A stretch of 64,000 nt of DNA from Macrostomum hystrix. Taxonomy: Eukaryota; Animalia; Platyhelminthes. The notes under the pieces were generated by a model. The model ran no database searches. It was not told the origin of the DNA and saw nothing but the letters and a program-made list of their open reading frames with translations. The stretch spans positions 7,378,001-7,442,000 of the forward strand of contig CATNEN010000034.1 of NCBI GenBank assembly GCA_950097015.1. Reading direction: 5' to 3'. Below, piece by piece: positions 1 to 57,431 of the stretch (positions are counted from its first letter, which is position 1; every line of letters begins with the position of its first letter). A program made the translations under genes and the position numbers.

Positions 1-432
1 GGGAAATACTAGCTGAGAGACTGGGGAAATACTAGCTGAGAGACTGGGGAAATACTAGCTGGAAGACTGGGGAAATACTAACTGAGAGACTGGGGAAATA
101 CTAACTGAGAGACTGGGGAAATACTAACTGAGAGACTGGGGAAATACTAGCTGGAAGACTGGGGAAATACTAGCTGAGAAACTGGGGAAATACTAGCTGA
201 GAGACTGGGGAAATACTAGCTGAGAGACTGGGGAAATACTAGCTGGAAGACTGGGGAAATACTAACTGAGAGACTGGGGAAATACTAGCTGAGAGACTGG
301 GGAAATACTAGCTGGAAGACTGGGGAAATACTGCCTGGAAGACTGGGGAAATACTAGCTGGAAGACTGGGGAAATACTAGCTGAGAGACTGGGGAAATAC
401 TAGCTGGAAGACTGGGGAAATACTAGCTGGAA
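1..432. repeat. 23-bp minisatellite (ggggaaatactagctgagagact), downstream of MED6
   Basis: Directly visible tandem units; runs off the left edge of the window. Confidence 0.95.
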
Positions 433-17858: not shown

Positions 17859-20800
17859 ATGACATGTGATGTGTCATCAACTCCTAGCAGTCAGGTGTTC
17901 TCACCACTGACACTGTTTGAGTGCACAGTGACCAATGCGCAGATGCTTGTCGAATCTATGGCTGATAGGTAAAGTCCAAATTCAAGCAGAACTTATTCAG
18001 TTCGAGTTTCATATTCACAGTTTCTTCCACTTTGTTTACACAGGGAGCTGCTACGAGCACTAAAGATTGCCAACAGTCTGCACACTCACATTGTTGGCAT
18101 TATGGAGCCGCGATATGATCGAGTCTGTCAGCGCAGTGACGAACACGACGCCTGTCAGCTGCCACCGCCTTCGTTGATTATCAATCGACGCAGGCATCTG
18201 ACCCCGACGCCGCCAAATCAGCACGAGCTGCTGCAACAGCCTGCCTCTAAATTGGCCAAGATTAAAATGTGCACTAATGGCGGCGCACTGTCACCGTCCT
18301 CAGCTGGCTTTCCTAAGGTTGCTGGATTGCGTTCCGTCCATTTTCATTAAATATATTAGTTTTATACTGTTTGAGCACAGAACAAAAATAGTCTATATGT
18401 GATCTTTCAGTGCAAGTAATTCGTTTATGGGTTTGAGGCTTGCACCTAAAGGCTTAGATGCTAGTGGATTCCACTTATATTGAATTAGGGGTTTGAGGCT
18501 TGCACCTGAAGGCTAAGAGGCTAGTGGATTCCACTTATAATGGATTAGGGGTTTGAGGCTTGCACCTGAAGGCTAAGAGGCTAGTGGATTCCACTTATAA
18601 TGAATTAGGGGTTTGAGGCTTGCACCTGAAGGCTAAGAGGCTAGTGGATTCCACTTATAATGAATTAGGGGTTTGAGGCTTGCACCTGAAGGTTCAGAGG
18701 CTAGTGGATTCCACTTATAATGAATTAGGGGTTTGAGGCTTGCACCTGAAGGCTAAGAGGCTAGTGGATTCCACTTATAATGAATTAGGGGTTTGAGGCT
18801 TGCACCTGAAGGTTCAGAGGCTAGTGGATTCCACTTATAATGGATTAGGGGTTTGAGCTAGCTAGGCATGGATAAGTAGGTCGCTCTGCGTATGTACGAT
18901 ATTATTAGCTTTATACAACTAAGGTAGCATTAGTTTTATACGTACTCAAATAACTGAACTGCAGGTTGAACCATCGGTTGAGCAAATGGGCGAAGCTCTC
19001 CATGACGTTACCGGAGCCGACGAAGAATCTTCAACTGGCGCGGCAGCTCTGGGAGCCTACCCCGACGAAAATTTCTTGGACGAAGAGGACGACTGCCTTC
19101 TAGTAGAAGATTCCTGCGAAGGCGTCCTTGGCAGCGGTGCCGGTGCCGGAGTCTCTGCTTTGTCGGCGCCCGCAGGCATCGGCCAGCTTCCTCGCCGGCG
19201 TCAACGCCGTCAGCCGCGTCGTTCCTCCGCTGCCGCTGCGTCGGCATCCGCCGCAGACGACGATGACAACGAAGGCGGCTTCAGCGGCGCCGATCTGAGC
19301 GGATTGGGCATCGCTGGTGCTCCCGGATCGCAGACGGATGTGGCCTCGCTATGCAAGAGTGCCATTCACCTGGCCTACAAAGAGATGAAAGGCAGCGGGC
19401 CGCATCTGTTTGACTTCAGCCTGCCGTGAGTTTTTATGGCTGTGAAATGCTGTTCAGTCTTCAGATTCAATACATATTTAGGATGGTAAGAAGTGGGTCA
19501 GTAAGGACCAGTGGGTCAGTAAGGACTAGTGGGTCAGTGAGGGCCAGTGTGTCAGTAAGGACCAATGGGTCAGTATGAATCAGTGGGTCAGTAAGGACCA
19601 GTGGATCAGTATGGACCAGTGGGTCAGTAAGGACCAGTGGATCAGTATGGATCAGTGGGTCAGTAAGGACCAGTGGGTCAGTAAGGACCAGTGGATCAGT
19701 ATGGATCAGTGGGTCAGTAAGGACCAGTGGGTCAGTGAGGACCAGTGGATCAGTATAGATCAGTGGGTCAGTAAGGACCAGTGGGTCAGTGATGGCCAGT
19801 GGGTCAGTAAGGACCAGTGGGTCTGTGAGGACCAGTGGGTCAGTAAGGACCAGTGGGTCAGTGAGGACCAGTGGGTCAGTAAGGATCGGTGGGTCAGGAA
19901 GGATCGGTGGGTCAGTTGTAATCAGTGAGTCACTCATTACCATCACTAATGATTTACAACGCTGGCGGCGCAGTTTCAGCGATCCGGTGAATTCCACTGC
20001 CGCTGAGCAGGTGATCAATAGAGCCATGCAGCTGCAGCCGCAGGTTGACGTGCCCCCCGATGTTTGGTGGAGTAAGCATCGTGTTCTTTGTTGCTTTTTG
20101 TGACAAATTCTTATTTTTATTTAATGTAGAATGGCTCCTTACTCTCTCTCTCCTTGCTTTATTTTGGGCCGTCTGTTGCAATTGACTAAGCGAAGCAATC
20201 GCGCCAGTTCAAACTATAGGACCTATATGACATTAATTAACTAATCAGCAGGTTTCCATATAGATGAATAGAAATATCAATGATGTAAAAATAGTTTTGC
20301 TGTTCCTCTATTTCAGTCATTTATAAAAAGCAGAGAGAGAGGGTTATTCAATAAATAAATTTCTTTCCAAATTAGACTAGAGGCATTGTTTAGTGTGCGC
20401 TCTCTAAAACTATTGGCAGGCCAATTGTGCCCCGTTGAGCTAAACCGGCAAGCCAGATCTGAGAAGCTGTGGCGTCAGCGAATGCTCATGAGACGTCTAA
20501 GATCCAAGGATAGTGTAGGTTTTGCCAACACATTCGCCTTTTTTCATCCCATTTTTGTAATCTCTTCTATTCGCTTTTGTGGGTCACTTGCTTTTATGTA
20601 TTCTCTGAGATCTTCCAATATTGTCCTAGTGACAAAAATGGTCAATATTCCATCAGAGAATTGTCGAAATGGCTAACAAACCGATCGAATTCCATCAGAC
20701 AATTGTCGAAATGACTTACAAACCGATCGAATTCCATCAGACAATTGTCGAAATGACTTACAAACCGATCGAATTCCATCAGACAACTGTCGAAACGACT

Positions 20801-23403
20801 TACAAACTGATCGAATTCCATCAGACAATTGTCGAAATGGCTTACAACTGATCGAATTCCATCAGACAATTGTCGAAACGACTTACAAACTGATCGAATT
20901 CCATCAGACAACTGTCGAAACGACTTACAAACGATGGATCGAATTCCATCAGACAATTGTCGAAACGACTTACAAACTGATCGAATTCCATCAGACAATT
21001 GTCGAAACGACTTACAAAGTGATCGAATTCCATCAGACAACTGTCGAAACGACTTACAAACTGATCGAATTCCATCAGACAATTGTCGAAACGACTTACA
21101 AGCCGATCGAATTCCATCAGACAATTGTCGAAACGACTTACAAACTGATCGAATTCCATCAGACAACTGTCGAAACGACTTACAAACGATGGATCGAATT
21201 CCATCAGACAATTGTCGAAACGACTTACAAACTGATCGAATTCCATCAGACAATTGTCGAAACGACTTACAAGCCGATCGAATTCCATCAGACAATTGTC
21301 GAAATGACTTACAAACCGATCGAATTCCATCAGACAATTGTCCAAATGGCTAACAAAACGATCGAATTCCATCAGACAATTAGCGAAACGACTTACAAAG
21401 TGATCGAATTCCATCAGACAATTGTCGAAACGACTTACAAACTGATCGAATTCCGTCAGATAATTGTCGAAACGGCTTACAACTGATCGAATTCCATCAG
21501 ACAATTGTCGAAACGACTTACAAACTGATCGAATTCCATCAGACAATTGTCGAAACGGCTTACAACCCGATCGAATTCTATCAGACAATTGTCGAAACGA
21601 CTTACAAACTGATCGAATTCCGTCAGAAAATTGTCGAAACGGCTTACAACTGATCGAATTCCATCAGACAACTGTCGAAATGACTTACAACCCGATCGAA
21701 TTCCATCAGATAATTGTCGAAACGACTTACAAACTGATCGAATTCCGTCAGAAAATTGTCGAAACGGCTTACAACTGATCGAATTCCATCAGACAACTGT
21801 CGAAATGACTTACAAACTGATCGAATTCCATCAGACAATTGTCGAAATGACTTACAAACTGATCGAATTCCATCAGACAATTGTCGAAATCGCTAACAAA
21901 CCGATCGAATTCCATCAGATAATTGTCGAAACGACTTACAAAGTGATCGAATTCCATCAGAAAATTGTCAAAATTGGCTAATTAACTGGTCGACTTCCGA
22001 ACTTATAATTAAATAATGTGATTTGTTTCGGACGCAATTAAGAGTAAATGGGTTTCAAAGTGACCTTTTCCCTTCAAAATCAAATCAGCTTAGACGTATT
22101 TTTGCGAGTATATTGACGCTATAACTGTTGTGTCACTTGTTGTATTTTTAAAGCATTCCTTTTTTACTTTTTCCACTGGACAAGGAGAGAGACGGGAGTC
22201 TATAGCAGGCGAGCGAGTTATTTATGGAACTAGATCATGTTTAACTGTGTGAGGTCATCCAATCGGTGTTGCAGAGTCTCTAGGTCGACAATTTTCAATG
22301 GAGAAGTACAACTGCACAGCCAAGTTTCGCATGCGCAGGCACAGATATATGTGCAGGGTAAATTAGCTGAACCGTCATCATATAGATAGCGCCTTGTAGC
22401 TCTTTTCTGTTTTATTCAATTTACCTGCTCTAACTGAGCTGCGTACTACCTATTGACAACACCTGCTAGTGCTAAAGGTTTTAAATAATCATATTGTTGT
22501 TTAGTTATTCTCACTGATATCACAATCCTGAAGTCTGTCCTTCACTGCATCCAGATCCTGAAGTCTGTCCTTCACTGCATCCATATTCTGAAGTCTGTCC
22601 TTCACTGCATCCAGATCCTGAAGTCTGTCCTTCACTGCATCCAGATTCTGAAGTCTGTCCTTCACTGCATCCAGATTCTGAAGTCTGTCCTTCACTGCAT
22701 CCAGATCCTGAAGTCTGTCCTTCACTGCATCCAGATTCTGAAGTCTGTCCTTCACTGCATCCAGATCCTGAAGTCTGTCCTTCACCGCCTCCAGATCCTG
22801 AAGTCTGTCCTTCACTGCATCCAGATCCTGAAGTCTGTCCTTCACCGCCTCCAGATCCTGAAGTCTGTCCTTCACCGCCTCCAGATCCTGAAGTCTGTCC
22901 TTCACTGCATCCAGATCCTGAAGTCTGTCCTTCACTGCATCCAGATCCTGAAGTCGCGTCCCAATCCCGATATACTTTTCTCTGTCCCGCAGAAGCTGAC
23001 TCGCCGACAGAAAAGTTTCGAACTAATCGCGCCCACGCTCAACACTGAAGCATTCGACAAGTTCCGCCTGATCCTGTCTCGCGACTACACCTCCTCTGAT
23101 GAAGAGGCCGAAGATTTTCCTCCGTCCGGCGGTGGGTCCTCCACCTCCGCCACCGCATTCGCCGGAGCTCCGCTGCGCGTACGCGAACTGCCCTGGGAGT
23201 CGGATGAGATGGGCCAAATGAAGCGCCAATTAGACGCCGCCTATTTAGAATCCTGCGCAACCGCTCGTCAAACTGAACAGCTGCGCAGGGTGTCCCGCGG
23301 CACCGGCTGCGTCAGCGCCCGGCCTCCGCCAGCCGACTGTCCCAACTGGGCCATTCGACGAGACGATGGGGGCGGCGCGGGCGTTGGTAGCATTCTGGAA
23401 TGA
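17859..23403 (+). CDS. Paralog A, uncharacterised protein with a C14orf93/DUF4616-like C-terminus; exons 17859-17968, 18044-18317, 18965-19425, 19974-20071, [candidate 22275-22357], 22993-23403
   Basis: Exons defined by homology to paralog B (FSPLTLFE, NAQML.ESMA, MEPR..R.C.RSD, GPHLFDFS.P, KL.RRQ.SFEL, RDYTSSDEE, LRVRELPWESDE, KRQLD, S.RPPP...P.WA) and phase-consistent splice sites. The fifth exon is tentative, the 18318 donor (GTTGCT) is weak, and the family label is from recalled motif pattern only. Confidence 0.75.
18428..18858. repeat. 60-bp minisatellite, about 7 copies, in paralog A intron 2
   Basis: Consecutive sequence lines repeat with period 60. Confidence 0.97.
19490..19925. repeat. 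18-bp minisatellite (cagtgggtcagtaaggac) in paralog A intron 3
   Basis: Tandem units visible. Confidence 0.95.
20645..21975. repeat. About 42-bp minisatellite (gatcgaattccatcagacaattgtcgaaacgacttacaaact) in paralog A
   Basis: Tandem units with 41-45 bp variants; contains the palindrome gacaattgtc. Confidence 0.95.
22522..22955. repeat. 30-bp minisatellite (cctgaagtctgtccttcactgcatccagat) in paralog A
   Basis: About 14 tandem units. Confidence 0.97.
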
Positions 23404-25026: not shown

Positions 25027-28000
25027 ATGGCGGCCTGTGAATCGGCTGCGCCGCCTTTCTCACCGTTGACGCTATTTGAATCGACCATCACCAACGCCCA
25101 GATGCTGCTGGAGTCCATGGCTGAGAGAGAATTGTTCACAGCCATGCGTATTGTCACCTGCCTGCACGCCCAGCTTCTCCAGGTGATGGAGCCAAGATTT
25201 GGCCGACTGTGCGATCGCAGCGACCAGCTGGGTCTGCTGATGGACGCGGAGCCGCCTGTAGCTAGTCGAAGCGGTGATCGGCAGCATCAGCAGCAGCAGC
25301 AGCAGCATCAGGTAGATCAGCCGAACCAGATGTACAGAGCTAAGACCGATCCAGATGGTGGAGATGGAATCCTTGGCGCTGCCCTGTGCGCCATCAAGGT
25401 GAGGCTGCTCAATCCATTGCTGCTAATCCCCATAGATTTCACAGGCCAAATCCCAATGTATTTCACTGGTCAAATCCCAATGCATTTCACTGCTCAAATC
25501 TCAATGGATTTTACTGCTCAAATCCCAATTTATTTCACTGGTCAAATCCCAATGGATTTTACTGGTCAAATCCCAATTTATTTCACTGCTCAAATCCTCA
25601 ATGGATTCCACTGCTTAAATCGCAAATGTATTCCACTGCTTAAATCGCCAATGGATTCCACTGCTCAAATCCTCAATGGATTCAACTGCTTAAATCGCCA
25701 ATGTATTCCACTGCTTAAATCGCCAATGGGTTCCACTGCTCAAATCCTCAATGGATTCCACTGCTCAAATCCTCAAAGGATTCCACTGCTCAAATCCTCC
25801 ATGTATTCCACTGCTTAAATCGCCAATGGATTCCACTGCTCAAATCCTCAATGTATTCCACTGCTCAAATCCTCAATGTATTCCACTGTTCAAATCCTCA
25901 ATATATTCCACTGCTCAAATCCTCAATATATTCCACTGCTCAAATCCTCAATGTATTCCACTGCTCAAATCCTCAATGGATTCCACTGCTCAAATCCTCA
26001 ATATATTCCACTGCTCAAATCCTCAATGGATTCCACTGCTCAAATCCTCAATGGATTCCACTGCTCAAATCCTCAATGGATTCCACTGCTCAAATCCTCA
26101 ATGGATTCCACTGCTCAAATCCTCAATGGATTCCACTGCTCAAATCCTCAATGGATTCCACTGCTCAAATCCTCAATGGATTCCACTGCTCAAATCCTCA
26201 ATGTATTCCACTGCTCAAATCCTCAATGGATTCCACTGCTCAAATCCTCAATGGATTTCACTGCTTAAATCGCCAGTGTATTCCACTGCTCAAATCCTCA
26301 ATGTATTCCACTGCTCAAATCCTCAATGGATTCCACTGCTCAAATCCTCAATGTATTCCACTGCTCAAATCCTCAATGGATTCCACTGCTCAAATCCTCA
26401 ATGGATTCCACTGCTCAAATCCTCAATGTATTCCACTGCTCAAATCCTCAATGGATTCCACTGCTCAAATCCTCAATGGATTCCACTGCTCAAATCCTCA
26501 ATGTATTCCACTGCTCAAATCCTCAATGGATTCCACTGCTCAAATCCTCAATGGATTCCACTGCTCAAATCCTCAATGTATTCCACTGCTCAAATCCTCA
26601 ATGGATTCCACTGCTCAAATCCTCAATGGATTCCACTGCTCAAATCCTCAATGGATGCCACTGCTCAAATCCTCAATGGATTCCACTGCTCAAATCCTCA
26701 ATGTATTCCACTGCTCAAATTCTCAATGGATTCCACTGCTTAAATCCCCAATGGATTCCACTGCTCAAATCCTCAATGGATTTCACTGCTCAAATCCAAA
26801 TGGATTTCACTGATTAAATCTCAATGCATTTCACCAATACAATCCCTCTCGATCCATGGGTGTAACTCACAGATTTACTTTCACTCTAAACTTTGTCCAG
26901 GTTGACCCAGACGACACCGATCGAACCAGTCGCCGCTCCCTTCGCCCGCTCGCCGATTCAAATCTCTGCGCTGGCGTCTCCCAAAGCGCCAACGCTTCAG
27001 CTTCAATCCTCGGCGCCGGACCCGACGATGACGACGAAGAGGAGCTGGAAGAAGAACTCGAAGAGGACGAAGAGTGCGTCATCATGGCCGCCACTGCCGC
27101 CGAGCAGGAGTTCTCGGCCTCGACAGCCTTCGGTGGCTACTCCCAACTGCACCATCATCCGCTCCAGCCAGCCGCCAAGATTGCCCGCTACGATTATTCC
27201 GCTCTAAGCGGCGCTTCCTCTTCCTCTGCCGGCGTCTCCTCGGCTATGCCAGCCGGGGATGTGCCAGCCGAATGCAAAACTGTCATGCGGCGGGCCTACA
27301 AGGCGCTGAAGGGTGCCGGGCCGCATCTGTTTGACTTTAGCCAGCCGTGAGTGAATCTGGTGGAACCCGTCGTTTTATTATTTGTTTATCTTCTTGTCAA
27401 AGTCCTCACCCTCTTGTCATTTCGTACGTTCCCGTTATTATTTCGATTTCCGTCTTTCCATTCCTCTCTTCCCATTCCTCTCTTCCCATTCCTCTCTTCC
27501 CATTCCTCTCTTCCCATTCCTCTCTTCCCCTTCATCTCTTCCCCTTCCTCTCTTCCCATTCCTCTCTTCCCCTTCCTCTCTTCCCATTCCTCTCTTCCCA
27601 TTCCTCTCTTCCCATTCCTCTCTTCCCCTTCCTCTCTTCCCCTTCCTCTCTTCCCATTCCTCTCTTCCCCTTCCTCTCTTCCCCTTCCTCTCTTCCCATT
27701 CCGCTCTTCCCCTTCCTCTCTTCCCATTCCTCTCTTCCCATTCCGCTCTTCCCCTTCCTCTCTTCCCCTTCCTCTCTTCCCATTCCTCTCTTCCCCCTCC
27801 TTCACCTCCTCCCTAGCGCCTTCATATTTTAAGTCCTTTCTGTTTTCTTTCTAATTTTCCTATTGCTCTTATTCCTGCCAAACAATCACCCGTGCATTAG
27901 ATTTGGCGCCGAGGTAAATCAACGCGTCGCGGCTCAGGTGATGACTAAAGCCAAGGAAATGTCCATCGGCAAGGGCTGGCCAGATGACGTTTGGCAGAGT

Positions 28001-28146
28001 GAGTACAGCGGTCTCAATGAGACCTATTTCATATAATCTGTTTATTGATGAATTATTGAGTAAGTCTTATTAGTACAATTGGCAATTTAATTTTTTCACG
28101 CTTACAGCCTGATTGTTCTGGAAACGTCGCAAGTCCCATTTCTCTC

Positions 28147-28178
<32 letters not shown>

Positions 28179-31100
28179 AGTGTGTTTGTGTGTGTATGTG
28201 ATTCTATCTTCTATTACCAAAATTGTCTAATAGCTATTTTAATTTTACTATTTTATTCGTTTGTTATTTATTCGATGCAAATCTGTTACTAAAAGTAGTA
28301 TGACACAAAATGACGCTCTTGTGCGTTATATGATTACTAGTTAATATAAAATTAGACGTATTCTTCTTCTAAATGACCATGGTGCCTGAAATAATTGGCA
28401 CTTTACTGCGAGTGTTGAAACTAATAATTCACTCAACCATGTATGACAGCTTAATTAACTAATTAATTTATTTTGTATCCATTAATTAGCTTGAGACCGT
28501 CTGTGTTGCGCAACATCAGCTAATTTAGCTTCGGGTAGTCAGTCACAGGAGCGTAAACTGACTTAAATTTAGTGAATTTATCACAGCTTCACAAAGTCGG
28601 CCTGTGAGCAGTGAATTTGTTATTGAGCAAATTGCATTTGCTTTCACACGCAGGCCTGCCAAAGAAGAGCAGATTAGACATGATCTTCCTCACCTTTAAG
28701 CACAATAATAAGCAGCGCAGCAGGTCGTTTGTAAGTGCTTTCAATTTGTAAATAGCTTTGGATTATTCTCATGTTTCTCATTCGTGTTATCAGACCGAAA
28801 CACATTATGGCTTTTCCAACTGCTTATTAAAGATGTGTGCTTCTATTTGCTGGCTTTTGAAGCAGCTATTTGATTTTCTATCGGTCATTTCAAACTGATC
28901 ATTTGATCAGCATTGCCATCTGGTCTGTTTGTCGTAACAATCTGATCTGATCTGGTCATTGGGTTAGTCATAAACAATCTGGTCATTGAATTAGTCATAA
29001 ACAATCTAGTCATTGGGTTAGTCATAAACAATCTGGTCATTGGGTTAGTCATAAACAATCTGGTCATTGGGTTAGTCATATCAATCTGGTCATTGGGTTA
29101 GTCATATCAATCTGGTCATTGGGTTAGTCATAAACAATCTAGTCATTGGGTTAGTCATAAACAATCTGGTCATTGGGTTAGTCATAAACAATCTGGTCAT
29201 TGAGTTAGTCATATCAATCTGGTCATTGGGTTAGTCATAAACAATCTGGTCATTGGGTTAGTCATATCAATCTGGTCATTGGGTTAGTCATATCAATCTG
29301 GTCATTGGGTTAGTCATAAACAATCTAGTCATTGGGTTAGTCATAAACAATCTGGTCATTGGGTTAGTCATAAACAATCTGGTCATTGAGTTAGTCATAT
29401 CAATCTGGTCATTGGGTTAGTCATAAACAATCTGGTCATTGGGTTAGTCATAAACAATCTGGTCATTGATTTAGTCATATCAATCTGGTCATTGGGTTAG
29501 TCATAAACAATCTGGTCATTGGGTTAGTCATAAACAATCTGGTCATTGGGTTAGTCATAAACAATCTGGTCATTGGGTTAGTCATATCAATCTGGTCATT
29601 GGGTTAGTCATAAACAATCTGGTCATTGATTTAGTCATATCAATCTGGTCATTGGGTTAGTCATAAACAATCTGGTCATTGGGTTAGTCATAAACAATCT
29701 GGTCATTGAGTTAGTCATAAACAATCTGGTCATTGAGTTAGTCATAAACAATCTGGTCATTGGGTTAGACTCTTGACACTTGACCCTCTTTGAATTCAGT
29801 TTTTATACTGAGTATATATTTTATCGCAATTAGTACTGTTTTGTACTTTAGAATTGTACTAGCTAAAACCTTGTGACGTTTTCAATTTTGCTTAATTAAA
29901 TTTTCTTTGATCGAAGAATAAAAGAAGACTGAGCAACAACAGGCAGTGAGCGCGAGCACAATTCAAAGTTGCTAGTTTGTGCATACCTGTCATTAAGTTA
30001 TTTATAATGATGAGGTGGCGATGGTTAGAACAAAATAAATGTCGAATTGCAGATCTGCCACCAGTCTGTAGATTGTCAACTGTGTTCTCTAAGCTGCGAT
30101 TTGATATTCGAAGAAATTACAAATTTAATGTAAGCTTTTTCTACTAGAGTCGATTGTTTTACTTTTATGTCCTTTTGGTTTTTTCTTTGTTTCCCATTTT
30201 CTTCCATCAGAGCAGCTTGTGACGTTTCGATCAGTCAGATAATCCAATAATGGATATTGTAAATCATGATTTTTTGACGCCTAAACACATTGAAATGGTC
30301 TATCTAAATTTGTAGGGATTGCCTACAAATATCGAATTGATGGCATTTTTAGTCACTTTCGCACCAAGGCAAAATCTAAATATCGCGAAATTGTAAGCTG
30401 GCTAAGTACTATCAGTACCATTCTGCTTGTTGTGTCACATCTTTATCTTTGCATTTCATTGATATTCAGATAGTCATTGAATAGGAAATTTAGATAGTCA
30501 TTGAATAGGAAATTTAGATAGTCATTGGATGGGATATTCAGATAGTCATTGGATGGGATATTCAGATAGTCATTGGATGGGATATTCAGATAGTCATCGG
30601 ATGGGATATTCAGATAGTCATTGGATGGGATATTCAGATAGTCATTGGATGGGATATTCAGATAGTCATTGGATGGGATATTCAGATAGTCATCGGATGG
30701 GATATTCAGATAGTCATTGGATGGGATATTCAGATAGTCATTGGATGGGATATTCAGATAGTCATCGGATAGGATATTCAGATAGTCATTGGATGGGATA
30801 TTCAGATAGTCATTGGATGGGATATTTAATGGTCAATGATTAATGTGCATTATGTAATTATTTTGCCCGTGGTTGCCGAGAAAAGGATCCTACCTATTTT
30901 GTCATCGCGACGTTTTCGTTCGACAATCAGTCTGAAATAGTGAAATTCAGACTGAATGTGACATTCAATTCAGGAAAAATCGGAGCCTGTACGCATGTCG
31001 CCACCTGAATGCAAATAATTACATTTTCAGAAATTCCCTACACATCAAAGCCAGTTTTCTTTTTTTCCAACTTTCGCGCCAAGATGCGGACCAAGTTTAG

Positions 31101-33608
31101 AAACATTGTAAGCTACCGGATGACAGAAACGGTTTAAATGCGAGTAGATGCTTTTCGTGGTGTCCTACTAACAGTAGAATGCATCAAAATACAATCGAGC
31201 GTATAAGGAAATGGCAAAGGGTGCAACCGGGCACTGTAGAAATTATATATAATGGAAGGTCACTGTAAGGACTAGGGCAGGATCATTACTCGTTGGCCAA
31301 GGAAGAAATACGAGACGACGACAAAGACGTACAAAGACGACAGCGGGTCGTAAAGTTATGACTCAGTACGGACATGCGACAATAAAAAGATTAGACGAGG
31401 AATAAGACAGGGGAAGAGACAAGATAGGGGAGAGATAAGTGAGTGGGGAGAGATGTGACAGGGAAGATATGAGATAGGGGAGAGATGAGACAGGGAAGAG
31501 ATAAGACAGGGAAGAGATAAGAGTGGGGAGAGATGAGTCAGGGGAGAGATGAGACACGGAGAGAGATGAGACAGCTGATAATATGAGACAGGGAAGAGAT
31601 GAGTCAGGGGAGAGAAGAGACACGGAGAGAGATGAGACAGTATAAGTAGGCCAGTTGCCAGATTCGAAAGCTTCAAAGGGGTGCATTGGTGTACGAGTAT
31701 GGTGCAGTGTTTTGAGAGTTCAACAAGCATCATGCCAGTGTTGAGTTTGAGCAAAAGGCTGACAAAAGCACGAATTGCCTTAAACAGAAGCTCAGCAGGC
31801 GCCAGCGCAGTTTCGAACTGGTTGCCACCAGCCTCAGCACGGACGAATTGGAGAAATTCCGCGTCATCCTGACTCGCGACTACACCAGCTCGGATGAGGA
31901 GTGCGGCTCCGGCGGCTCCGACCAGCTGCGGGTGCGCGAGCTGCCCTGGGAGTCTGATGAGGTCAGCAACTGTTGCTATGCTCTGCCACTCTTGCTCTTA
32001 TTTTATTTTGAGATTGAGATTTTGAGAATAAAATAATCCAATCTAGGATGGGATTTTGAGAATAATATAATCCAATCTAGGATGAGATTTTGAGAATAAT
32101 ATAATCCAATCTAGGATGAGATTTTGAAAATAATCGGCTTTAATTTGGGGTGAGATTTTGAAAATAATCGGCTCTAATTTAGGATGAGATTTTGAAAATG
32201 ATCGGCTCTAATTTGGGGTGAGATTTCGAAAATCATCGGCTCTAATTTGGGGTGAGATTTCGAAAATCATCGGCTCTAATTTGGGGTGAGATTTCGAAAA
32301 TCATCGGCTCTAATTTGGGGTGAGATTTCGAAAATCATCGGCTCTAATTTGGGGTGAGATTTCGAAAATCATCGGCTCTAATTTGGGGTGAGATTTCGAA
32401 AATCATCGGCTCTAATTTGGGGTGAGATTTCGAAAATCATCGGCTCTAATTTGGGGTGAGATTTCGAAAATCATCGGCTCTAATTTGGGGTGAGATATTG
32501 AAAATCTTCGGCTCTAATTTGGGGTGAGATATTGAAAATCATCGGCTCTAATTTGGGGTGAGATATTGAAAATCTTCGGCTCTAATTTGGGGTGAGATAT
32601 TGAAAATCATCGGCTCTAATTTGGGGTGAGATATTGAAAATCTTCGGCTCTAATTTGGGGTGAGATATTGAAAATCATCGGCTCTAATTTAGGATGAGAT
32701 ATTGAAAATCATCGGCTCTAATTTAGGATGAGATTTCGAAAATCATCGGCTCTAATTTGGGGTGAGATTTCGAAAATCATCGGCTCTAATTTGGGGTGAG
32801 ATTTTGAAAATGATCGGCTCTAATTTGGGGTGAGATTTCGAAAATCATCGGCTCTAATTTGGGGTGAGATTTCGAAAATCATCGGCTCTAATTTGGGGTG
32901 AGATTTCGAAAATCATCGGCTCTAATTTGGGGTGAGATATTGAAAATCATCGGCTCTAATTTAGGATGAGATTTCGAAAATCATCGGCTCTAATTTGGGG
33001 TGAGATTTCGAAAATCATCGGCTCTAATTTGGGGTGAGATTTCGAAAATCATCGGCTCTAATTTGGGGTGAGATTTCGAAAATCATCGGCTCTAATTTGG
33101 GGTGAGATATTGAAAATCTTCGGCTCTAATTTGGGGTGAGATTTCGAAAATCATCGGCTCTAATTTGGGGTGAGATTTCGAAAATCATCGGCTCTAATTT
33201 GGGGTGAGATATTGAAAATCTTCGGCTCTAATTTAGGATGAGATTTTGAAAATGATCGGCTCTAATTTGGGGTGAGATTTTGAAAATGATCGGCTCAAAT
33301 TTAGGATGAGATTTTGAAAATGGTCGGCTCAAATTTAGGCTGCGATTTATGTTGGACTCCAGTCCTTTTAATCCCCAACTGGGCCATTGGCACCCAAACC
33401 GCAGGTTAAGCGGCTGAAGCGCCAGCTGGACCAGGTGTACGCGGACAATTGCGCCACCACCAAACAGCGTCAGCAGCTGGCCAAGAGTATTCGCGATCCG
33501 ATGCGGGCCAGGTCCCAGCGACCGCCGCCTGAGGGCGCCCCGGACTGGGCGCTGAAGTCGGCGCCCGACTCGCCCTCAGGTGCTGCCGGGACTAAGCGAG
33601 TGGCCTGA
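25027..33608 (+). CDS. Paralog B, uncharacterised C14orf93/DUF4616-like protein; exons 25027-25398, 26901-27346, 27901-27998, one of four 77-nt exons, 31788-31961, 33405-33608 (456 aa)
   Basis: All junctions are GT-AG and phase-consistent; total 1371 nt = 457 codons with any one 77-nt exon; homologous to paralog A throughout. Confidence 0.85.
25415..26830. repeat. 25-bp minisatellite (ccactgctcaaatcctcaatggatt) filling paralog B intron 1
   Basis: Tandem units visible. Confidence 0.97.
27455..27800. repeat. 14-bp pyrimidine minisatellite (ttcctctcttccca) in paralog B intron 2
   Basis: Tandem units visible. Confidence 0.95.
28150..28200. repeat. (TG)n microsatellite
   Basis: Directly visible. 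Confidence 0.95.
28654..28730 (+). CDS. Paralog B alternative exon 4a: (S)LPKKSRLDMIFLTFKHNNKQRSRSF
   Basis: tttcacacgCAG|...|GTAAGT; 77 nt; phase 1->0; open frame. Confidence 0.78.
28945..29768. repeat. 27-bp minisatellite (tctggtcattgggttagtcataaacaa) between exons 4a and 4b
   Basis: Tandem units visible. Confidence 0.97.
30053..30129 (+). CDS. Paralog B alternative exon 4b: (N)LPPVCRLSTVFSKLRFDIRRNYKFN
   Basis: gaattgCAG|...|GTAAGC; 77 nt; phase 1->0; open frame. Confidence 0.78.
30316..30392 (+). CDS. Paralog B alternative exon 4c: (R)IAYKYRIDGIFSHFRTKAKSKYREI
   Basis: aaatttgTAG|...|GTAAGC; 77 nt; phase 1->0; open frame. Confidence 0.8.
30465..30825. repeat. 24-bp minisatellite (gatagtcattggatgggatattca) between exons 4c and 4d
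   Basis: Tandem units visible. Confidence 0.97.
31031..31107 (+). CDS. Paralog B alternative exon 4d: (K)IPYTSKPVFFFSNFRAKMRTKFRNI
   Basis: attacattttCAG|...|GTAAGC; 77 nt; phase 1->0; open frame. Confidence 0.8.
31278..31700. mobile_element. Degenerate hAT MITE, family 2, with an internal degenerate 16-17 bp GA-rich repeat
   Basis: Shares aaagacgacagcggg and a gcc.gatt...agcttc.a.gg segment with the 56534 copy. TIRs are eroded and no TSD was found. Confidence 0.65.
32015..33345. repeat. 34-bp minisatellite (gagatttcgaaaatcatcggctctaatttggggt) filling the last intron of paralog B
   Basis: Tandem units within intron 31962-33404. Confidence 0.97.
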
Positions 33609-53040: not shown

Positions 53041-53499
53041 CACATAGCTTCCATTTTGCTTATAAATCTATACAGTTTTCGTATCACTGGTAATTAACAG
53101 AATTATTAACAGAAGCACGTTGACAGCAGGGGATTACCATAAATCAGGTGTGTGGGATAATCAGTATATTCGCCCCTTCCAATAAACTCCGAACACGTTG
53201 TCATGTGCTCTCAAAGCTTCTAAACTTGCCAATAGAGTGCGCTAATGCCCTTTCCAAAAATGTACGAGCGTAGAAGACACGAGAAATCTTTGAGAATTAA
53301 GGAGACATTAGTTGCGTAATCAACCGTCACAGTCCTATCTATGCATGCATTATATGCAATGTTAAAGCGATCAAAATTTTCATCGTTTGTTCAGCTGCGT
53401 TCTATGTATAAGGCATTAAAGCGACTTACACACGAAAGCTTAAATTGTTTCACTTACTTGTCCATTTTTACTTACGGTTGGGTAGACTACATCCATGAT

Positions 53500-54270
53500 G
53501 TCTCATCTCTCCCTGTCTTATCTCTCCCTGTCACATCTCTCCCCTGTCTCAACTCTCCCCTGTCTTATCTCTCCCCTGTCTCATCTCTCCCCTGTCTCAT
53601 CTCTCCCCTGTCTCATCTCTCCCCTGTCTCATCTCTCCCCTGTCTTATCTCTCCCCTGTCTCATCTCTCCCCTGTCTCATCTCTCCCCTGTCTCATCTCT
53701 CCCCTGTCTCATCTTTCTCCCTGTCTCATCTCTCCCTGTCTCAACTCTCCCTTTTCGCATCTCTCTGTCTCATATTTCTCCCTGTCTCATCTCTCCCTGT
53801 CTCGTCTCTCCCTGTCTCGTCTCTCCCTGTCTCATCTCTCCCTGTCTCGTCTCTCCCTGTCTCGTCTCTCCCTGTCTCAACTCTCCCATTTCGCATCTCT
53901 CTGTCTCATCTGTCTCCCTGCCTCATCTCTCCCTGTCTCAACTCTCCGATTTCGCATCTCTCTGTCTCATCTTTCTCCCTGTCTCATCTCTCTCCCTGTC
54001 TCATCTCTCTCCCTGTCTCATCTCTCCCTGTCTCATCTCTCCCTGTCTCAACTCTCCCATTTCGCATCTCTCTGTCTCATCTTTCTCCCTGTCTCATCTC
54101 TCTCCCTGTCTCATCTCTCTCCCTGTCTCATCTCTCCCTGTCTCATCTCTCCCTGTCTCAACTCTCCCATTTCGCATCTCTCTGTCTCATCTCTCTCCGT
54201 CTTATCTCTTCCCTGTCTCATCTCTCCCCTGTCTCATCTCTCCCCTGTCTCATTTCTCCCGTGCCTCATC
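53500..54270. repeat. 16-17 bp minisatellite (ctcccctgtctcatct), reverse orientation of the hAT-internal repeat type
   Basis: Tandem, degenerate units. Confidence 0.9.
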
Positions 54271-55339
54271 TGCAGTGAATAATTCCAGTAAAATTTATAC
54301 ATTTCTTCGAGGTAGAAAAACTGAAATAATCGCAGAAGTCACGAACAGAGATCTCAATCACCCCAGGTCCTTGACAAGCTTGCTATGTTTTTAATAAACT
54401 ATTTACTTAGGCGGATTTGAGCTAGTCGCTAATAACAATGGTAGGCCATGATCCCGCAGATGCGCGAACTGAATTCTATTTTTATAAATAGAGGTTTTCG
54501 AGTCCACAATGTGTATAGAGAATTATTCGCTTGAATTGAAAACAACAATATACTCGTATACTGGAATTGAATGCCGAGCATTTCTAGGCTTATCTGTTCA
54601 GATAAGGAAACCTTTAAATATATGCCTACTCAGGAAAAATTCTATTAATTATAATTCAATATTGTCTATAAGGGCTCACAAAGCTCGCGTGTCTAAAAAT
54701 TCTTTTTAAAATCCGATTTTTTTAATTCATATTTCGAAGGCGTGAATAGAGTAAGGATTGGTGTTCAACTAGCTAGCTTTGAAGTGTCCACTGAAAAAAA
54801 TGTCAAAACCATCTGCCGCTACAGGACAGTTTAATTGATATTTTAATATCGAATTTTTCTAGACCGCTTCTCTAAGTCTATAGTTGTTGGACTGCAGCTG
54901 GATGCGAAGCATGCAATTATTATTAATGATTGTAATAACTTGACTTGGCCTCTATATAAAGAAAGTCTTCACTTGAAGAGGAAGACATTTTTGGAATAAT
55001 ATTTCAGACACTGAAGCGCTTACGAGTATGACGTATTGCGCAATGAGTGTCATTTTGAGCTGGCATGAGTGTGAGAAACATGACTCGGCCACACCAAGAT
55101 TTGAGTAGATATTATTGTTGGCATCGGCAGGTGATTTTCTTCTACTAGGTGAACGGTGAAGTAGGTTAGGCGAAAGGCTAAGTGGAGAGGTAGGGGAGTG
55201 GAAGGGTGAGAGGCTGCGGGAGACGGGAGAGGGTGGAGGGAAGAGGATGCAGATAGAAAAGAGGATAAACAGGATGAAGAAATGAAGAACGTCAGTAGGC
55301 AGGGGCTGACGATATGGTGGAGAGGATGAAGGGAGGAAG

Positions 55340-56533: not shown

Positions 56534-57431
56534 CAGGGGTCGGCAAACTTATTAGCTGGCGGGCCAAAGAGAGAATCTAAAAGACGACAGCGGGCCGCTT
56601 TGACTGTAGAAATATTATATAAGGGCGAGATAAGACACGGGAAGATGAGACACGGGAGAGATGAGACACGGGAGAGATGAGACACGGGAGAGATGAGACA
56701 CGGGAGAGATGAGACACGGGAGAGATGAGACACGGGAGAGATGAGACACGGGAGAGATGAGACACGGGAGAGATGAGACACGGGAGAGATGAGACACGGG
56801 AGAGATGAGACACAGGAGAGATGAGACACGGGAGAGATAAGACACGGGAGAGATGAGACACGGGAGAGATGAGACACGGGAGAGATGAGACACGGGAGAG
56901 ATGAGACACGGGAGAGATGAGACACGGGAGAGATGAGACACGGGAGAGATGAGACACGGGAGAGATGAGACACGGGAGAGATGAGACACGGGAGAGATGA
57001 GACACGGGAGAGATGAGACACGGGAGAGATGAGACACGGGAGAGATGAGACACGGGAGAGATGAGACACGGGAGAGATGAGACACGGGAGAGATGAGACA
57101 CGGGAGAGATGAGACACGGGAGAGATGAGACACGGGAGAGATGAGACACGGGAGAGATGAGACACGGGAGAGATGAGACACGGGAGAGATGAGACACGGG
57201 AGAGATGAGACACGGGAGAGATGAGACACGGGAGAGATGAGACACGGGAGAGATGAGACACGGGAGAGATGAGACACGGGAGAGATGAGACACGGGAGAG
57301 ATGAGACACGGGAGAGATGAGACACGGGAGAGATGAGACAGGATACAATAGGTGTTGGAAGGGGCAACGGGCCGGATTAGGGAGCTTCGAGGGCCGCATC
57401 TGGCCCGCGGGCCGGTGTTTGCCGAGCCCTG
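56534..57431. mobile_element. hAT MITE, family 2, carrying about 43 copies of a 16-bp unit (atgagacacgggagag)
   Basis: TIRs CAGGGGTCGGCAAAC / GTTTGCCGAGCCCTG; perfect TSD cactagac; unique parts match 24662-24894. Confidence 0.95.

What the first reader, a model, noticed from the sequence alone, without database searches (positions are those of the whole stretch)
28654..31107. Cluster of four mutually exclusive 77-nt exons that swap a basic, putative recognition helix in paralog B
Between constitutive exons ending PDDVWQ-a (phase 1) and starting KLSRRQ (phase 0) lie four exons of identical length (77 nt). Each has a YAG acceptor, a GTAAG(T/C) donor and an open frame. They align without gaps: SLPKKSRLDMIFLTFKHNNKQRSRSF / NLPPVCRLSTVFSKLRFDIRRNYKFN / RIAYKYRIDGIFSHFRTKAKSKYREI / KIPYTSKPVFFFSNFRAKMRTKFRNI (consensus x[LI][PA]xxx[RK]xxxxFxx[FL][RK]...basic). 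Because 77 is not a multiple of 3, including zero or two exons frameshifts, so exactly one must be chosen. None appears in the ORF track. The hydrophobic and basic pattern suggests an amphipathic DNA-contacting helix with variable specificity residues. If so, this is a Dscam/lola/mod(mdg4)-like splicing switch in an uncharacterised family, possibly tuning sequence recognition; a link to the diverse satellites is speculative.
Basis: partly seen in the sequence, partly recalled or inferred. Interest (0 to 1): 0.9.

Follow-up and report, generated by a model that had tools for sequence, protein, structure and literature searches.

The report
Flatworm mutually exclusive exons with docking site
A flatworm (Macrostomum) gene carries four interchangeable 77-base exons, almost certainly used one at a time, and a conserved intronic "docking" sequence that can pair with a matching sequence ahead of most of these exons, the exon-choice design known from the insect Dscam gene.

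Summary
The four 77-nt segments sit exactly where described, with AG acceptors, GTAAG donors and open phase-1 frames.

They are real coding exons. Against the Macrostomum lignano ortholog (L002), only the exons and one intronic island align. Codon differences are mostly synonymous: 14:1 in E2 and 9:0 in E3. The ortholog's model PAA65011 reads U-E3-D, with E3 identical in protein. Sister loci carry 5, 7 and at least 13 homologous 77-nt exons. Skipping all exons, or including two, puts a stop codon in the next exon.

The new result is an invariant 17-nt docking site, CTGGAAACGTCGCAAGT, at 28118-28134. It is the only sequence shared by all four loci. It is complementary to selector sequences upstream of E2, E3 and E4, and of 22 of 29 variable exons overall. 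This is a Dscam exon-6-type arrangement. I found no report of it in flatworms.

The exon encodes part of a long basic amphipathic helix, predicted with confidence, in a C14orf93/RTFC-like domain. DNA binding is untested.

There is no direct junction evidence for E1, E2 or E4 in this animal.

The parts
25027..25398 (+). Exon 1 of paralog B (start codon to GTGAGG donor); N-terminal conserved helix region
   Evidence: tblastn of M. lignano P0008 and splice context
26901..27346 (+). Exon 2 (acidic linker and the ECK...GPHLFDF block); phase-2 donor GTGAGT
27901..27998 (+). Upstream constitutive exon U, ends ...PDDVWQ plus 1 nt (phase 1), donor GTGAGT
   Evidence: 83% nt identity to L002
28118..28134 (+). 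Docking site CTGGAAACGTCGCAAGT, 119 nt after the U donor. Pairing with the E3 and E4 selectors can extend 5' to about 28108.
   Evidence: Unique in the window and in L001. Identical in all four loci, and the source of the only 10-mers they all share. It is the only intronic blastn match to the ortholog.
28313..28327 (+). Second conserved intronic element ACGCTCTTGTGCGTT. It is either a small hairpin or a bulged selector for E1. Its role is unresolved.
   Evidence: 15/15 identical to L002 12384-12398 in an otherwise unalignable intron; fold and duplex
28654..28730 (+). Variable exon E1 (77 nt); no proximal selector found
   Evidence: 89.5% nt identity to L002 E1 with unalignable flanks, 5 synonymous and 3 non-synonymous codon differences
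29870..29884 (+). Selector for E2: 15-bp helix (2 G-U) with docking positions 2-16, 168 nt before the acceptor
   Evidence: duplex -22.3 kcal/mol, z -4.3
30053..30129 (+). Variable exon E2 (77 nt)
   Evidence: 14 synonymous and 1 non-synonymous codon differences against L002
30215..30228 (+). Selector for E3: 14-bp helix (2 G-U) with docking positions 4-17, 87 nt before the acceptor
   Evidence: -23.3 kcal/mol, z -5.4
30316..30392 (+). Variable exon E3 (77 nt), the exon present in the M. lignano ortholog's protein models
   Evidence: 26/26 aa identical to P0008 residues 304-329 and to P0171; 9 synonymous and 0 non-synonymous differences
30907..30930 (+). Selector for E4: 12-bp helix with docking positions 2-13 (30907-30918), plus a 9-bp helix (30922-30930) with the 5' extension of the docking region
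31031..31107 (+). Variable exon E4 (77 nt), the fastest-evolving of the four
   Evidence: 9 synonymous, 8 non-synonymous. In the RNA runs it is seen only inside one unspliced contig.
31788..31961 (+). Downstream constitutive exon D (KLSRRQ...), phase 0; donor GTCAGC
   Evidence: RNA contigs break exactly at 31788; 59/59 aa identical to P0008
33405..33608 (+). Last coding exon, through the stop codon

Best explanation
This is a genuine cluster of four mutually exclusive, tandemly duplicated 77-nt exons in a Macrostomum gene. The protein's C-terminal half is a C14orf93/RTFC-like domain.

Each exon encodes a 26-residue segment (xLPxxxR, then an amphipathic basic helix, net charge +4 to +7). This segment forms the end of one helix and the first 19 residues of a long helix of that domain. 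The hydrophobic and some basic positions are fixed, and the remaining positions differ between exons. Each isoform therefore keeps the scaffold and changes one surface.

Exclusivity is enforced in two ways. First, 77 is not a multiple of 3, so zero or two exons give a premature stop in the next exon; this is shown by translation. Second, and this is inferred, RNA pairings compete. A single 17-nt docking site 119 nt downstream of exon U can pair with only one selector at a time. The selectors lie 87-168 nt upstream of E2, E3 and E4. Pairing loops out the exons in between and brings the chosen exon next to the U donor, as proposed for Dscam1 exon 6.

How E1 is chosen is not resolved. Candidates are a default choice or the second conserved element at 28313. 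It is also unresolved how exons downstream of the chosen one are kept silent.
For: Homology of the four exons.

Conservation: against the M. lignano ortholog L002, only U, the docking site, E1-E4 and D align. Flanking introns are at near-random identity. Synonymous to non-synonymous codon differences are 5:3, 14:1, 9:0 and 9:8.

Public M. lignano models that include exactly one variable exon: PAA65011 and PAA81625 read U-E3-D, and PAA90078 reads U-E9-D at the L003-type locus.

The same architecture, with 5, 7 and at least 13 exons of 77 nt, is present in L002, L001 and L003. Orthology groups keep the same order.

The docking 17-mer is invariant in four loci, and it supplies the only 10-mers shared by all of them.

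Of 29 variable exons, 22 have a perfect helix of at least 9 bp with the docking site within 180 nt upstream. The opposite-strand control gives 1 of 29. With 1000 shuffled docking sites the mean is 3.5 and the maximum 14. Twenty of 29 have duplex z below -2.

Selectors cover different, overlapping parts of the docking site. At the core docking positions that are G or U (positions 3, 4, 9, 10 and 12), non-Watson-Crick cells are G-U wobbles 23 times and mismatches 9 times.

Structure: AlphaFold2 with 45 homologs gives pLDDT 90.3 and pTM 0.78, with the segment in helices H61-69 and H72-105.

Against: No read or contig shows U-E1, U-E2, U-E4 or Ei-D junctions in this animal. There, E4 appears only in an unspliced contig in one of two RNA runs.

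E1 here and in L002, and 5 further exons elsewhere, have no clear proximal selector.

Selectors descend from one another by duplication, so the 22 cases are not independent.

The docking site never varies, so no compensatory double changes can be shown.

One M. lignano model (PAA59491) joins U directly to D out of frame, so skipping does occur.

Nothing has been tested experimentally.
Confidence: 0.8

Rival explanations
1. The exons are truly mutually exclusive, but choice and exclusivity come from the frame rule with nonsense-mediated decay and from protein factors. On this view the repeated GACGTTTC-type motif upstream of the exons is a protein-binding splicing element inherited with each duplication, and its complementarity to the 17-mer has no function.
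For: Selectors are homologous by descent, so they would resemble each other anyway. No compensatory covariation is possible, because the docking site is invariant. Seven of 29 exons lack a clear selector.
Against: The 17-mer is not part of the duplicated unit, yet it is the reverse complement of the selectors and is the most conserved sequence in the whole interval. Selectors pair with different sub-segments of it, from positions -1..10 through 9..17, which one protein-binding motif would not explain. Changes in selectors favour G-U wobble. The opposite-strand control gives 1 of 29.
Confidence: 0.13
2. Only E3 is a working exon. E1, E2 and E4 are decaying duplicates that happen still to be open.
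For: The only ortholog models available carry E3. E4 was seen only unspliced.
Against: E1, E2 and E4 align to their M. lignano orthologs while their flanks do not, and they keep length, frame and splice sites. E2 shows 14 synonymous against 1 non-synonymous codon difference. All 29 exons in four loci keep 77 nt. At the L003-type locus the models carry other exon types: E9 in the NCBI model and E7 in a UniProt model.
Confidence: 0.05
3. The four open 77-nt windows arose by chance in AT-rich intron sequence.
For: None beyond the small size of the segments.
Against:: GTAAG donors, pairwise homology, and cross-species conservation limited to the exons.
Confidence: 0.01

Closest known systems
Dscam1 exon 6 cluster of Drosophila (docking site and selector sequences; Graveley's model, as summarised in PMC6071210)
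   Same: There is one conserved docking site in the intron just downstream of the upstream constitutive exon. A selector lies upstream of each variable exon. Each selector is complementary to an overlapping part of the docking site, so only one can pair. The exons are tandem duplicates of equal length.
   Different: The gene family and phylum differ (a C14orf93-like gene in a flatworm). There are 4 to at least 13 exons rather than 48. The first exon type lacks a proximal selector in two loci. No repressor equivalent to the one invoked for Dscam is known. The mechanism here is inferred from sequence only.
Insect 14-3-3zeta, Mhc and MRP1 mutually exclusive clusters with competing RNA structures (PMC6071210, PMC4691838)
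   Same: Small clusters of homologous exons are governed by competing intronic pairings.
   Different: According to PMC6071210, the docking sites in those genes lie downstream of the cluster. Here the docking site lies upstream, as in Dscam exon 6.
Tandem exon duplication model for the origin of competing structures (Ivanov and Pervouchine 2018, PMC6071210)
   Same: The exon and the adjacent intronic arm were duplicated together, giving many selectors for one docking arm. A related paralog (L004) still has a single 77-nt exon.
   Different: The single-exon paralog L004 shows no stem that could be the ancestor, so the origin of the docking arm is not explained.
Human C14orf93 / RTFC (mouse 4931414P19Rik), Pfam DUF4616
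   Same: It is the best fold match to the domain that contains the variable helix (Foldseek E 3.7e-5, probability 1.0). A lancelet protein annotated 'C14orf93-like' is also among the cluster hits. The molecular function is unknown in both (PMC5322522).
   Different: Identity is only 17% and TM-score 0.41. None of 45 family members matches any Pfam model at E up to 1, PF15394 included. I know of no exon cluster in the vertebrate gene and did not test for one.
lola / mod(mdg4) of Drosophila
   Same: Many isoforms share a common N-terminal part and differ in a putative recognition module.
   Different: From my own knowledge, those genes use alternative 3'-terminal exon sets, partly joined by trans-splicing. 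Here the variable exons are internal and flanked by common exons on both sides.

Membership tests
Mutually exclusive spliced exon cluster from tandem exon duplication (criteria named in the title of Pillmann et al. 2011, PMC3228551) | Neighbouring internal exons of equal or near-equal length | tested here: met
   All four are 77 nt and lie in one interval between exons U and D. All 29 exons in four loci are 77 nt.
Mutually exclusive spliced exon cluster from tandem exon duplication (criteria named in the title of Pillmann et al. 2011, PMC3228551) | Conserved splice sites and the same reading frame/phase | tested here: met
   AG acceptors, GTAAG donors, phase 1 in and phase 0 out for each.
Mutually exclusive spliced exon cluster from tandem exon duplication (criteria named in the title of Pillmann et al. 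2011, PMC3228551) | Sequence homology between the exons | tested here: met
   Ungapped pairwise scores exceed shuffled controls (p 0.0000 to 0.0044). The position pattern is shared.
Mutually exclusive spliced exon cluster from tandem exon duplication (criteria named in the title of Pillmann et al. 2011, PMC3228551) | Transcripts contain exactly one exon of the cluster, and each exon is used | tested here: inconclusive
   M. lignano models carry exactly one exon: E3 type in PAA65011 and PAA81625, L003 E9 in PAA90078. There is no junction evidence for E1, E2 or E4 in this animal. One skip model exists (PAA59491).
Docking site / selector competing RNA structure system (Dscam1 exon 6 type) | A single conserved docking element in the intron next to a constitutive exon | tested here: met
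   The 17-mer at 28118-28134 is invariant in four loci and unique in each source searched.
Docking site / selector competing RNA structure system (Dscam1 exon 6 type) | A selector complementary to the docking site next to every variable exon | tested here: inconclusive
   Met for E2, E3 and E4 (helices of 15, 14 and 12 bp) and for 22 of 29 exons overall. Not met for E1 here or in L002, nor for 5 other exons. The element at 28313 may serve E1.
Docking site / selector competing RNA structure system (Dscam1 exon 6 type) | Selectors overlap on the docking site, so pairings exclude each other | tested here: met
   All 22 helices lie within the 17-mer or within a few nt of it, and most share core positions 5-10.
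Docking site / selector competing RNA structure system (Dscam1 exon 6 type) | Disrupting the pairing changes exon choice, and compensatory changes restore it | not testable with these tools
   Needs minigenes or transgenic animals.
C14orf93 / RTFC family (Pfam PF15394, DUF4616) | Sequence match to the Pfam model | tested here: not met
   No Pfam match for the worm proteins or for 45 family members at E up to 1.
C14orf93 / RTFC family (Pfam PF15394, DUF4616) | Shared fold of the C-terminal domain | tested here: inconclusive
   Foldseek best Swiss-Prot hits are human and mouse C14orf93 (E 3.7e-5 and 4.8e-5, probability 1.0), but TM-score is 0.41. A 'C14orf93-like' lancelet protein is in the cluster hits. 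Language-model feature hits to DUF4616 clusters are weak.
lola / mod(mdg4)-type alternative 3' modules | Variable modules are alternative terminal exons | tested here: not met
   The variable exons are internal. Exon D and a further exon follow in every isoform.

The most novel reading that the evidence does not exclude
Flatworms evolved a Dscam-exon-6-type docking/selector switch independently. They use it to generate a repertoire of recognition surfaces on one helix of the otherwise uncharacterised C14orf93/RTFC-like domain: 4 variants here and 5, 7 and at least 13 in the three M. lignano copies. Exon choice would be cell-type-specific or stochastic, and the variable face would set target specificity for a nucleic acid or a protein. 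That would give the first mechanistic handle on this animal-wide orphan family.
Probability: 0.2. Interest if true: 0.85.

Novelty: new member of a known kind. Interest (0 to 1): 0.68.

Why it matters
According to the papers I read, docking/selector control of mutually exclusive splicing has been worked out mainly in arthropod genes, with a few vertebrate cases. Full-text searches found no report in flatworms or other spiralians.

A clean upstream-docking system is present here in an unrelated gene. Copy number differs between closely related loci (4, 5, 7, at least 13). A related paralog still has a single exon. This supports the idea that tandem exon duplication repeatedly creates such switches (PMC6071210).

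To my knowledge, M. lignano can be made transgenic, so the pairing model could be tested in vivo. The result also corrects public gene models that end in the intron or join two variable exons out of frame. It points to the one helix of the C14orf93-like domain that evolution chose to diversify.

Tried and rejected
- **Wide energy scan:** a scan with a 37-nt docking window did not separate signal from shuffles. It was replaced by helix-based and narrow-window tests.
- **Libraries with no result:** Pfam and NCBIfam gave no match above their curated cut-offs. The PDB sequence search gave only a match to yeast Rrn11 in the low-confidence linker region, which I disregarded. The PDB fold search gave nothing at E 0.001 or better. 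Rfam gave nothing.
- **UniProt-only models:** P0002 and P0004 have no contig on record.
- **Fifth exon:** a remnant of the fifth exon type of L002 was sought between E4 and D and not found.
- **Paralog A:** its U-to-D interval was scanned for a cluster and none was found in the window. Protein models of its type carry one longer basic segment between the conserved W and KL.RRQ. The docking 17-mer occurs only once in the window and once in L001, in paralog B.
- **Single-exon paralog L004:** no docking-like sequence was found in it.
- **First structure model:** the full-length model from 5 sequences was too poor to use (pLDDT 52.5).
- **Gene identifiers:** searching papers for the M. lignano gene ids found nothing.
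Full report
**1. The observation.** Reading the sequence and a script confirm the four segments: E1 28654-28730, E2 30053-30129, E3 30316-30392 and E4 31031-31107. Each is 77 nt, has a (Y)AG acceptor and a GTAAG(T/C) donor, and is open in the frame left by the phase-1 end of the upstream exon U (ends 27998, donor GTGAGT). Each hands over in phase 0 to the downstream exon D (starts 31788).

In the 3.8-kb interval only seven AG / 77 nt open / GT candidates exist, and only these four have GTAAG. The four peptides align without gaps, and every pair beats shuffled controls (p 0.0000-0.0044). Joining U to D directly, or including any two exons, gives a stop codon inside exon D, upstream of the last intron.

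**2. Organism and gene.** Protein searches found only Macrostomum lignano proteins at close range. The window is not M. lignano's own copy of this locus. Exons are 77-93% identical in DNA to the best M. lignano locus, and the introns do not align.

- 25027-25398
- 26901-27346
- U, 27901-27998
- one variable exon
- D, 31788-31961
- 33405-33608

An upstream tandem paralog A (about 17886-23358) is found in the same order in M. lignano locus L001.

**3. Are the four exons real?** I fetched four M. lignano loci through their NCBI proteins. L002 encodes P0008 (PAA65011) and is the ortholog.

Blastn of window 27850-32000 against the L002 interval returns only seven collinear matches:
- U (83%)
- a 23-nt intronic island (96%)
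- E1 (89.5%)
- E2 (79%)
- E3 (89%)
- E4 (77%)
- D (93%)

The 30 nt on either side of each variable exon are at 8-17 of 30 identities. Codon differences, synonymous to non-synonymous, are 5:3 for E1, 14:1 for E2, 9:0 for E3 and 9:8 for E4. All four are therefore maintained as coding sequence.

P0008 and P0171 (PAA81625) read U-E3-D, with E3 identical in all 26 residues to the window's E3. P0177 (PAA90078) reads U-E9-D at the L003-type locus. These NCBI proteins start upstream of the Met with translated leader, so I infer that they come from assembled transcripts. P0172 (PAA59491) joins U directly to D, out of frame.

UniProt models of the same genes either stop in the intron after U or join two variable exons with a frameshift. 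I treat those as prediction artefacts.

Two runs of one study behave as RNA. A 244-letter contig and an 876-letter contig match 31788-31925 perfectly, then continue upstream for 106 and 738 letters that are not the intron. The acceptor at 31788 is therefore used. The 106 letters equal 77 + 29, which would fit one variable exon plus a k-mer's worth of U, but the letters were not shown.

E4 was covered only by one unspliced contig in one run. This is weak negative evidence, because contigs drop rare forms.

**5. The cluster in sister loci.** The same scan finds homologous 77-nt exons between U and D in the other loci: 5 in L002, 7 in L001 and at least 13 in L003. Clustering gives exon types that keep the same order along the loci. 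The window's E1-E4 are types 1-4, and L002 has a fifth type that the window lacks. A more distant paralog (L004, P0011) has one 77-nt exon of this kind and short introns. In protein models of the paralog A type, a single longer basic segment takes that place. The cluster therefore grew by tandem duplication of a single exon.

The 23-nt conserved island contains CTGGAAACGTCGCAAGT at 28118-28134, 119 nt after the U donor.
- It is unique in the window (0.13 expected within 3 mismatches) and in L001.
- It is identical in all four loci, 76-437 nt after the U donor.
- It supplies the only 10-mers shared by all four U-to-D intervals, exons included.

Upstream of E2, E3 and E4 lie sequences that form perfect helices with it (G-U allowed) of 15, 14 and 12 bp. 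They sit 168, 87 and 112 nt before the acceptors. For E3 and E4 the pairing extends into 28108-28117.

Across the four loci, 22 of 29 variable exons have a helix of at least 9 bp within 180 nt upstream. The opposite strand gives 1 of 29. With 1000 shuffled docking sequences the mean is 3.5 and the maximum 14. Twenty of 29 have duplex energies more than 2 sd better than shuffled introns.

Selectors use different, overlapping parts of the docking site: positions -1..10 for the L003 E1-E3 type, 9..17 for L003 E8, and 2..16 for others. In register, 266 cells are Watson-Crick, 36 are G-U and 72 are mismatches. At the core docking positions that are G or U (3, 4, 9, 10 and 12), there are 23 wobbles against 9 mismatches.

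Apart from one AT-rich 12-mer, every low-copy intronic 12-mer shared by the window and L002 belongs to the docking site, to selectors, or to one further element: ACGCTCTTGTGCGTT at 28313.

This is the layout of Dscam1 exon 6 as summarised in PMC6071210: the docking site follows the upstream constitutive exon and a selector precedes each variant. That review says the other insect clusters have their docking site downstream.

**7. What is not explained.** E1 here and in L002, and five exons elsewhere, have no clear proximal selector. The element at 28313 could pair with the docking site through a bulged 10-bp helix, or it could fold into its own 4-5-bp hairpin. I cannot tell which.

The docking site never varies, so compensatory covariation cannot be shown. 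Selectors share ancestry, so they are not independent observations. Nothing indicates how exons downstream of the chosen one are silenced.

**8. The protein.** A profile of five family members found 331 relatives (E up to 0.001), among them a sea star protein and a bivalve protein. The family is therefore animal-wide, and it is unnamed.

With 45 homologs, AlphaFold2 models residues 240-454 of P0008 with mean pLDDT 90.3 and pTM 0.78. The variable 26 residues are model residues 65-90. They form the end of helix 61-69 and the first 19 residues of helix 72-105, with block pLDDT of 86-92.

Over 29 exons, positions 2, 3, 7, 8, 11, 12, 15, 16, 20, 22 and 24 are nearly fixed (L, P, R, L/I, I/L, F, F, R/K, R/K, K/R, R/K), and positions 19 and 23 stay mostly hydrophobic. 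Positions 5, 9, 10, 13, 17, 21, 25 and 26 are highly variable. Net charge is +4 to +7. This fits a fixed helical scaffold with one changeable face.

The best fold matches among reviewed proteins are human and mouse C14orf93/RTFC (E 3.7e-5 and 4.8e-5, probability 1.0, TM-score 0.41). Cluster hits include cnidarian, brachiopod, lancelet ('C14orf93-like') and fungal uncharacterised proteins. Language-model features had pointed weakly to DUF4616, but no Pfam model matches by sequence. PDB fold search found nothing. PMC5322522 states that RTFC's molecular function remains elusive. I found no evidence for or against DNA contact.

**9. Novelty.** Full-text searches for docking/selector systems in flatworms or other spiralians, for Macrostomum with mutually exclusive exons, and for the gene ids returned nothing relevant. 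I rate this a new member of a known kind: a Dscam-exon-6-type switch in a new phylum and gene family.

**10. Verdict.** A mutually exclusive cluster is very likely (about 0.9). The docking/selector mechanism is likely (about 0.8) but inferred. The helix swap is supported by a confident model. The DNA-recognition idea is untested.

Noticed in passing
window 17886-23358 (paralog A); L001 1526-8265: A tandem paralog lies upstream of the gene, in the same order as in M. lignano locus L001. Protein models of its type have a single longer basic segment where paralog B has the cluster. The docking 17-mer occurs only once in the window and once in L001, in paralog B.
   Followed up: partly
window 28313-28327; L002 12384-12398: A 15-nt element (ACGCTCTTGTGCGTT) is perfectly conserved in the intron between the docking site and E1. 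It can form a small hairpin, or a bulged 10-bp helix with the docking site.
   Followed up: partly
window 31405-31640 (also 53499-54271 and 56623-57340): Contigs resembling the 16-nt GAGATGAGACA-type minisatellite reach summed word depths above 100,000 in the RNA-like runs of organism A and about 2,000 in organism B. The repeat family is therefore extremely abundant in these libraries.
   Followed up: no
window 31962-33404; L001 15664-16053: The intron between exon D and the last exon consists almost entirely of two different 34-nt minisatellites (32015-33348). It is absent from the M. lignano paralog L001, where D and the last exon are one continuous open frame.
   Followed up: no
whole window: Tandem Repeats Finder lists 49 rows with score at least 100 and units of 5-167 nt. 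Within this gene, arrays fill much of the introns (for example 25447-26834, 27453-27795, 28950-29768 and 30461-30826). Introns did not align with the M. lignano ortholog, so the arrays appear to turn over quickly.
   Followed up: partly
M. lignano proteins P0005, P0006, P0176, P0002, P0182, P0012, P0016: UniProt models of these genes join two variable exons out of frame or run into introns. They also carry names, such as exocyst Sec8, Exo70, Rab-GAP TBC and protein kinase, that nothing in the sequences supports.
   Followed up: partly
M. lignano P0172 (PAA59491): A model joins exon U directly to exon D and reads on out of frame, so a form that skips all variable exons seems to exist.
   Followed up: no
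L003 12876-12952: A possible fourteenth variable exon (KLLRRTVAMFAEFRR...) lies between the docking site and E1 of L003. It appears in UniProt model P0182, but in my scan it had a GC rather than a GT after 77 nt.
   Followed up: no
window 28138-28200: A CT-rich run and a (TG)n microsatellite follow immediately 3' of the docking site.
   Followed up: no
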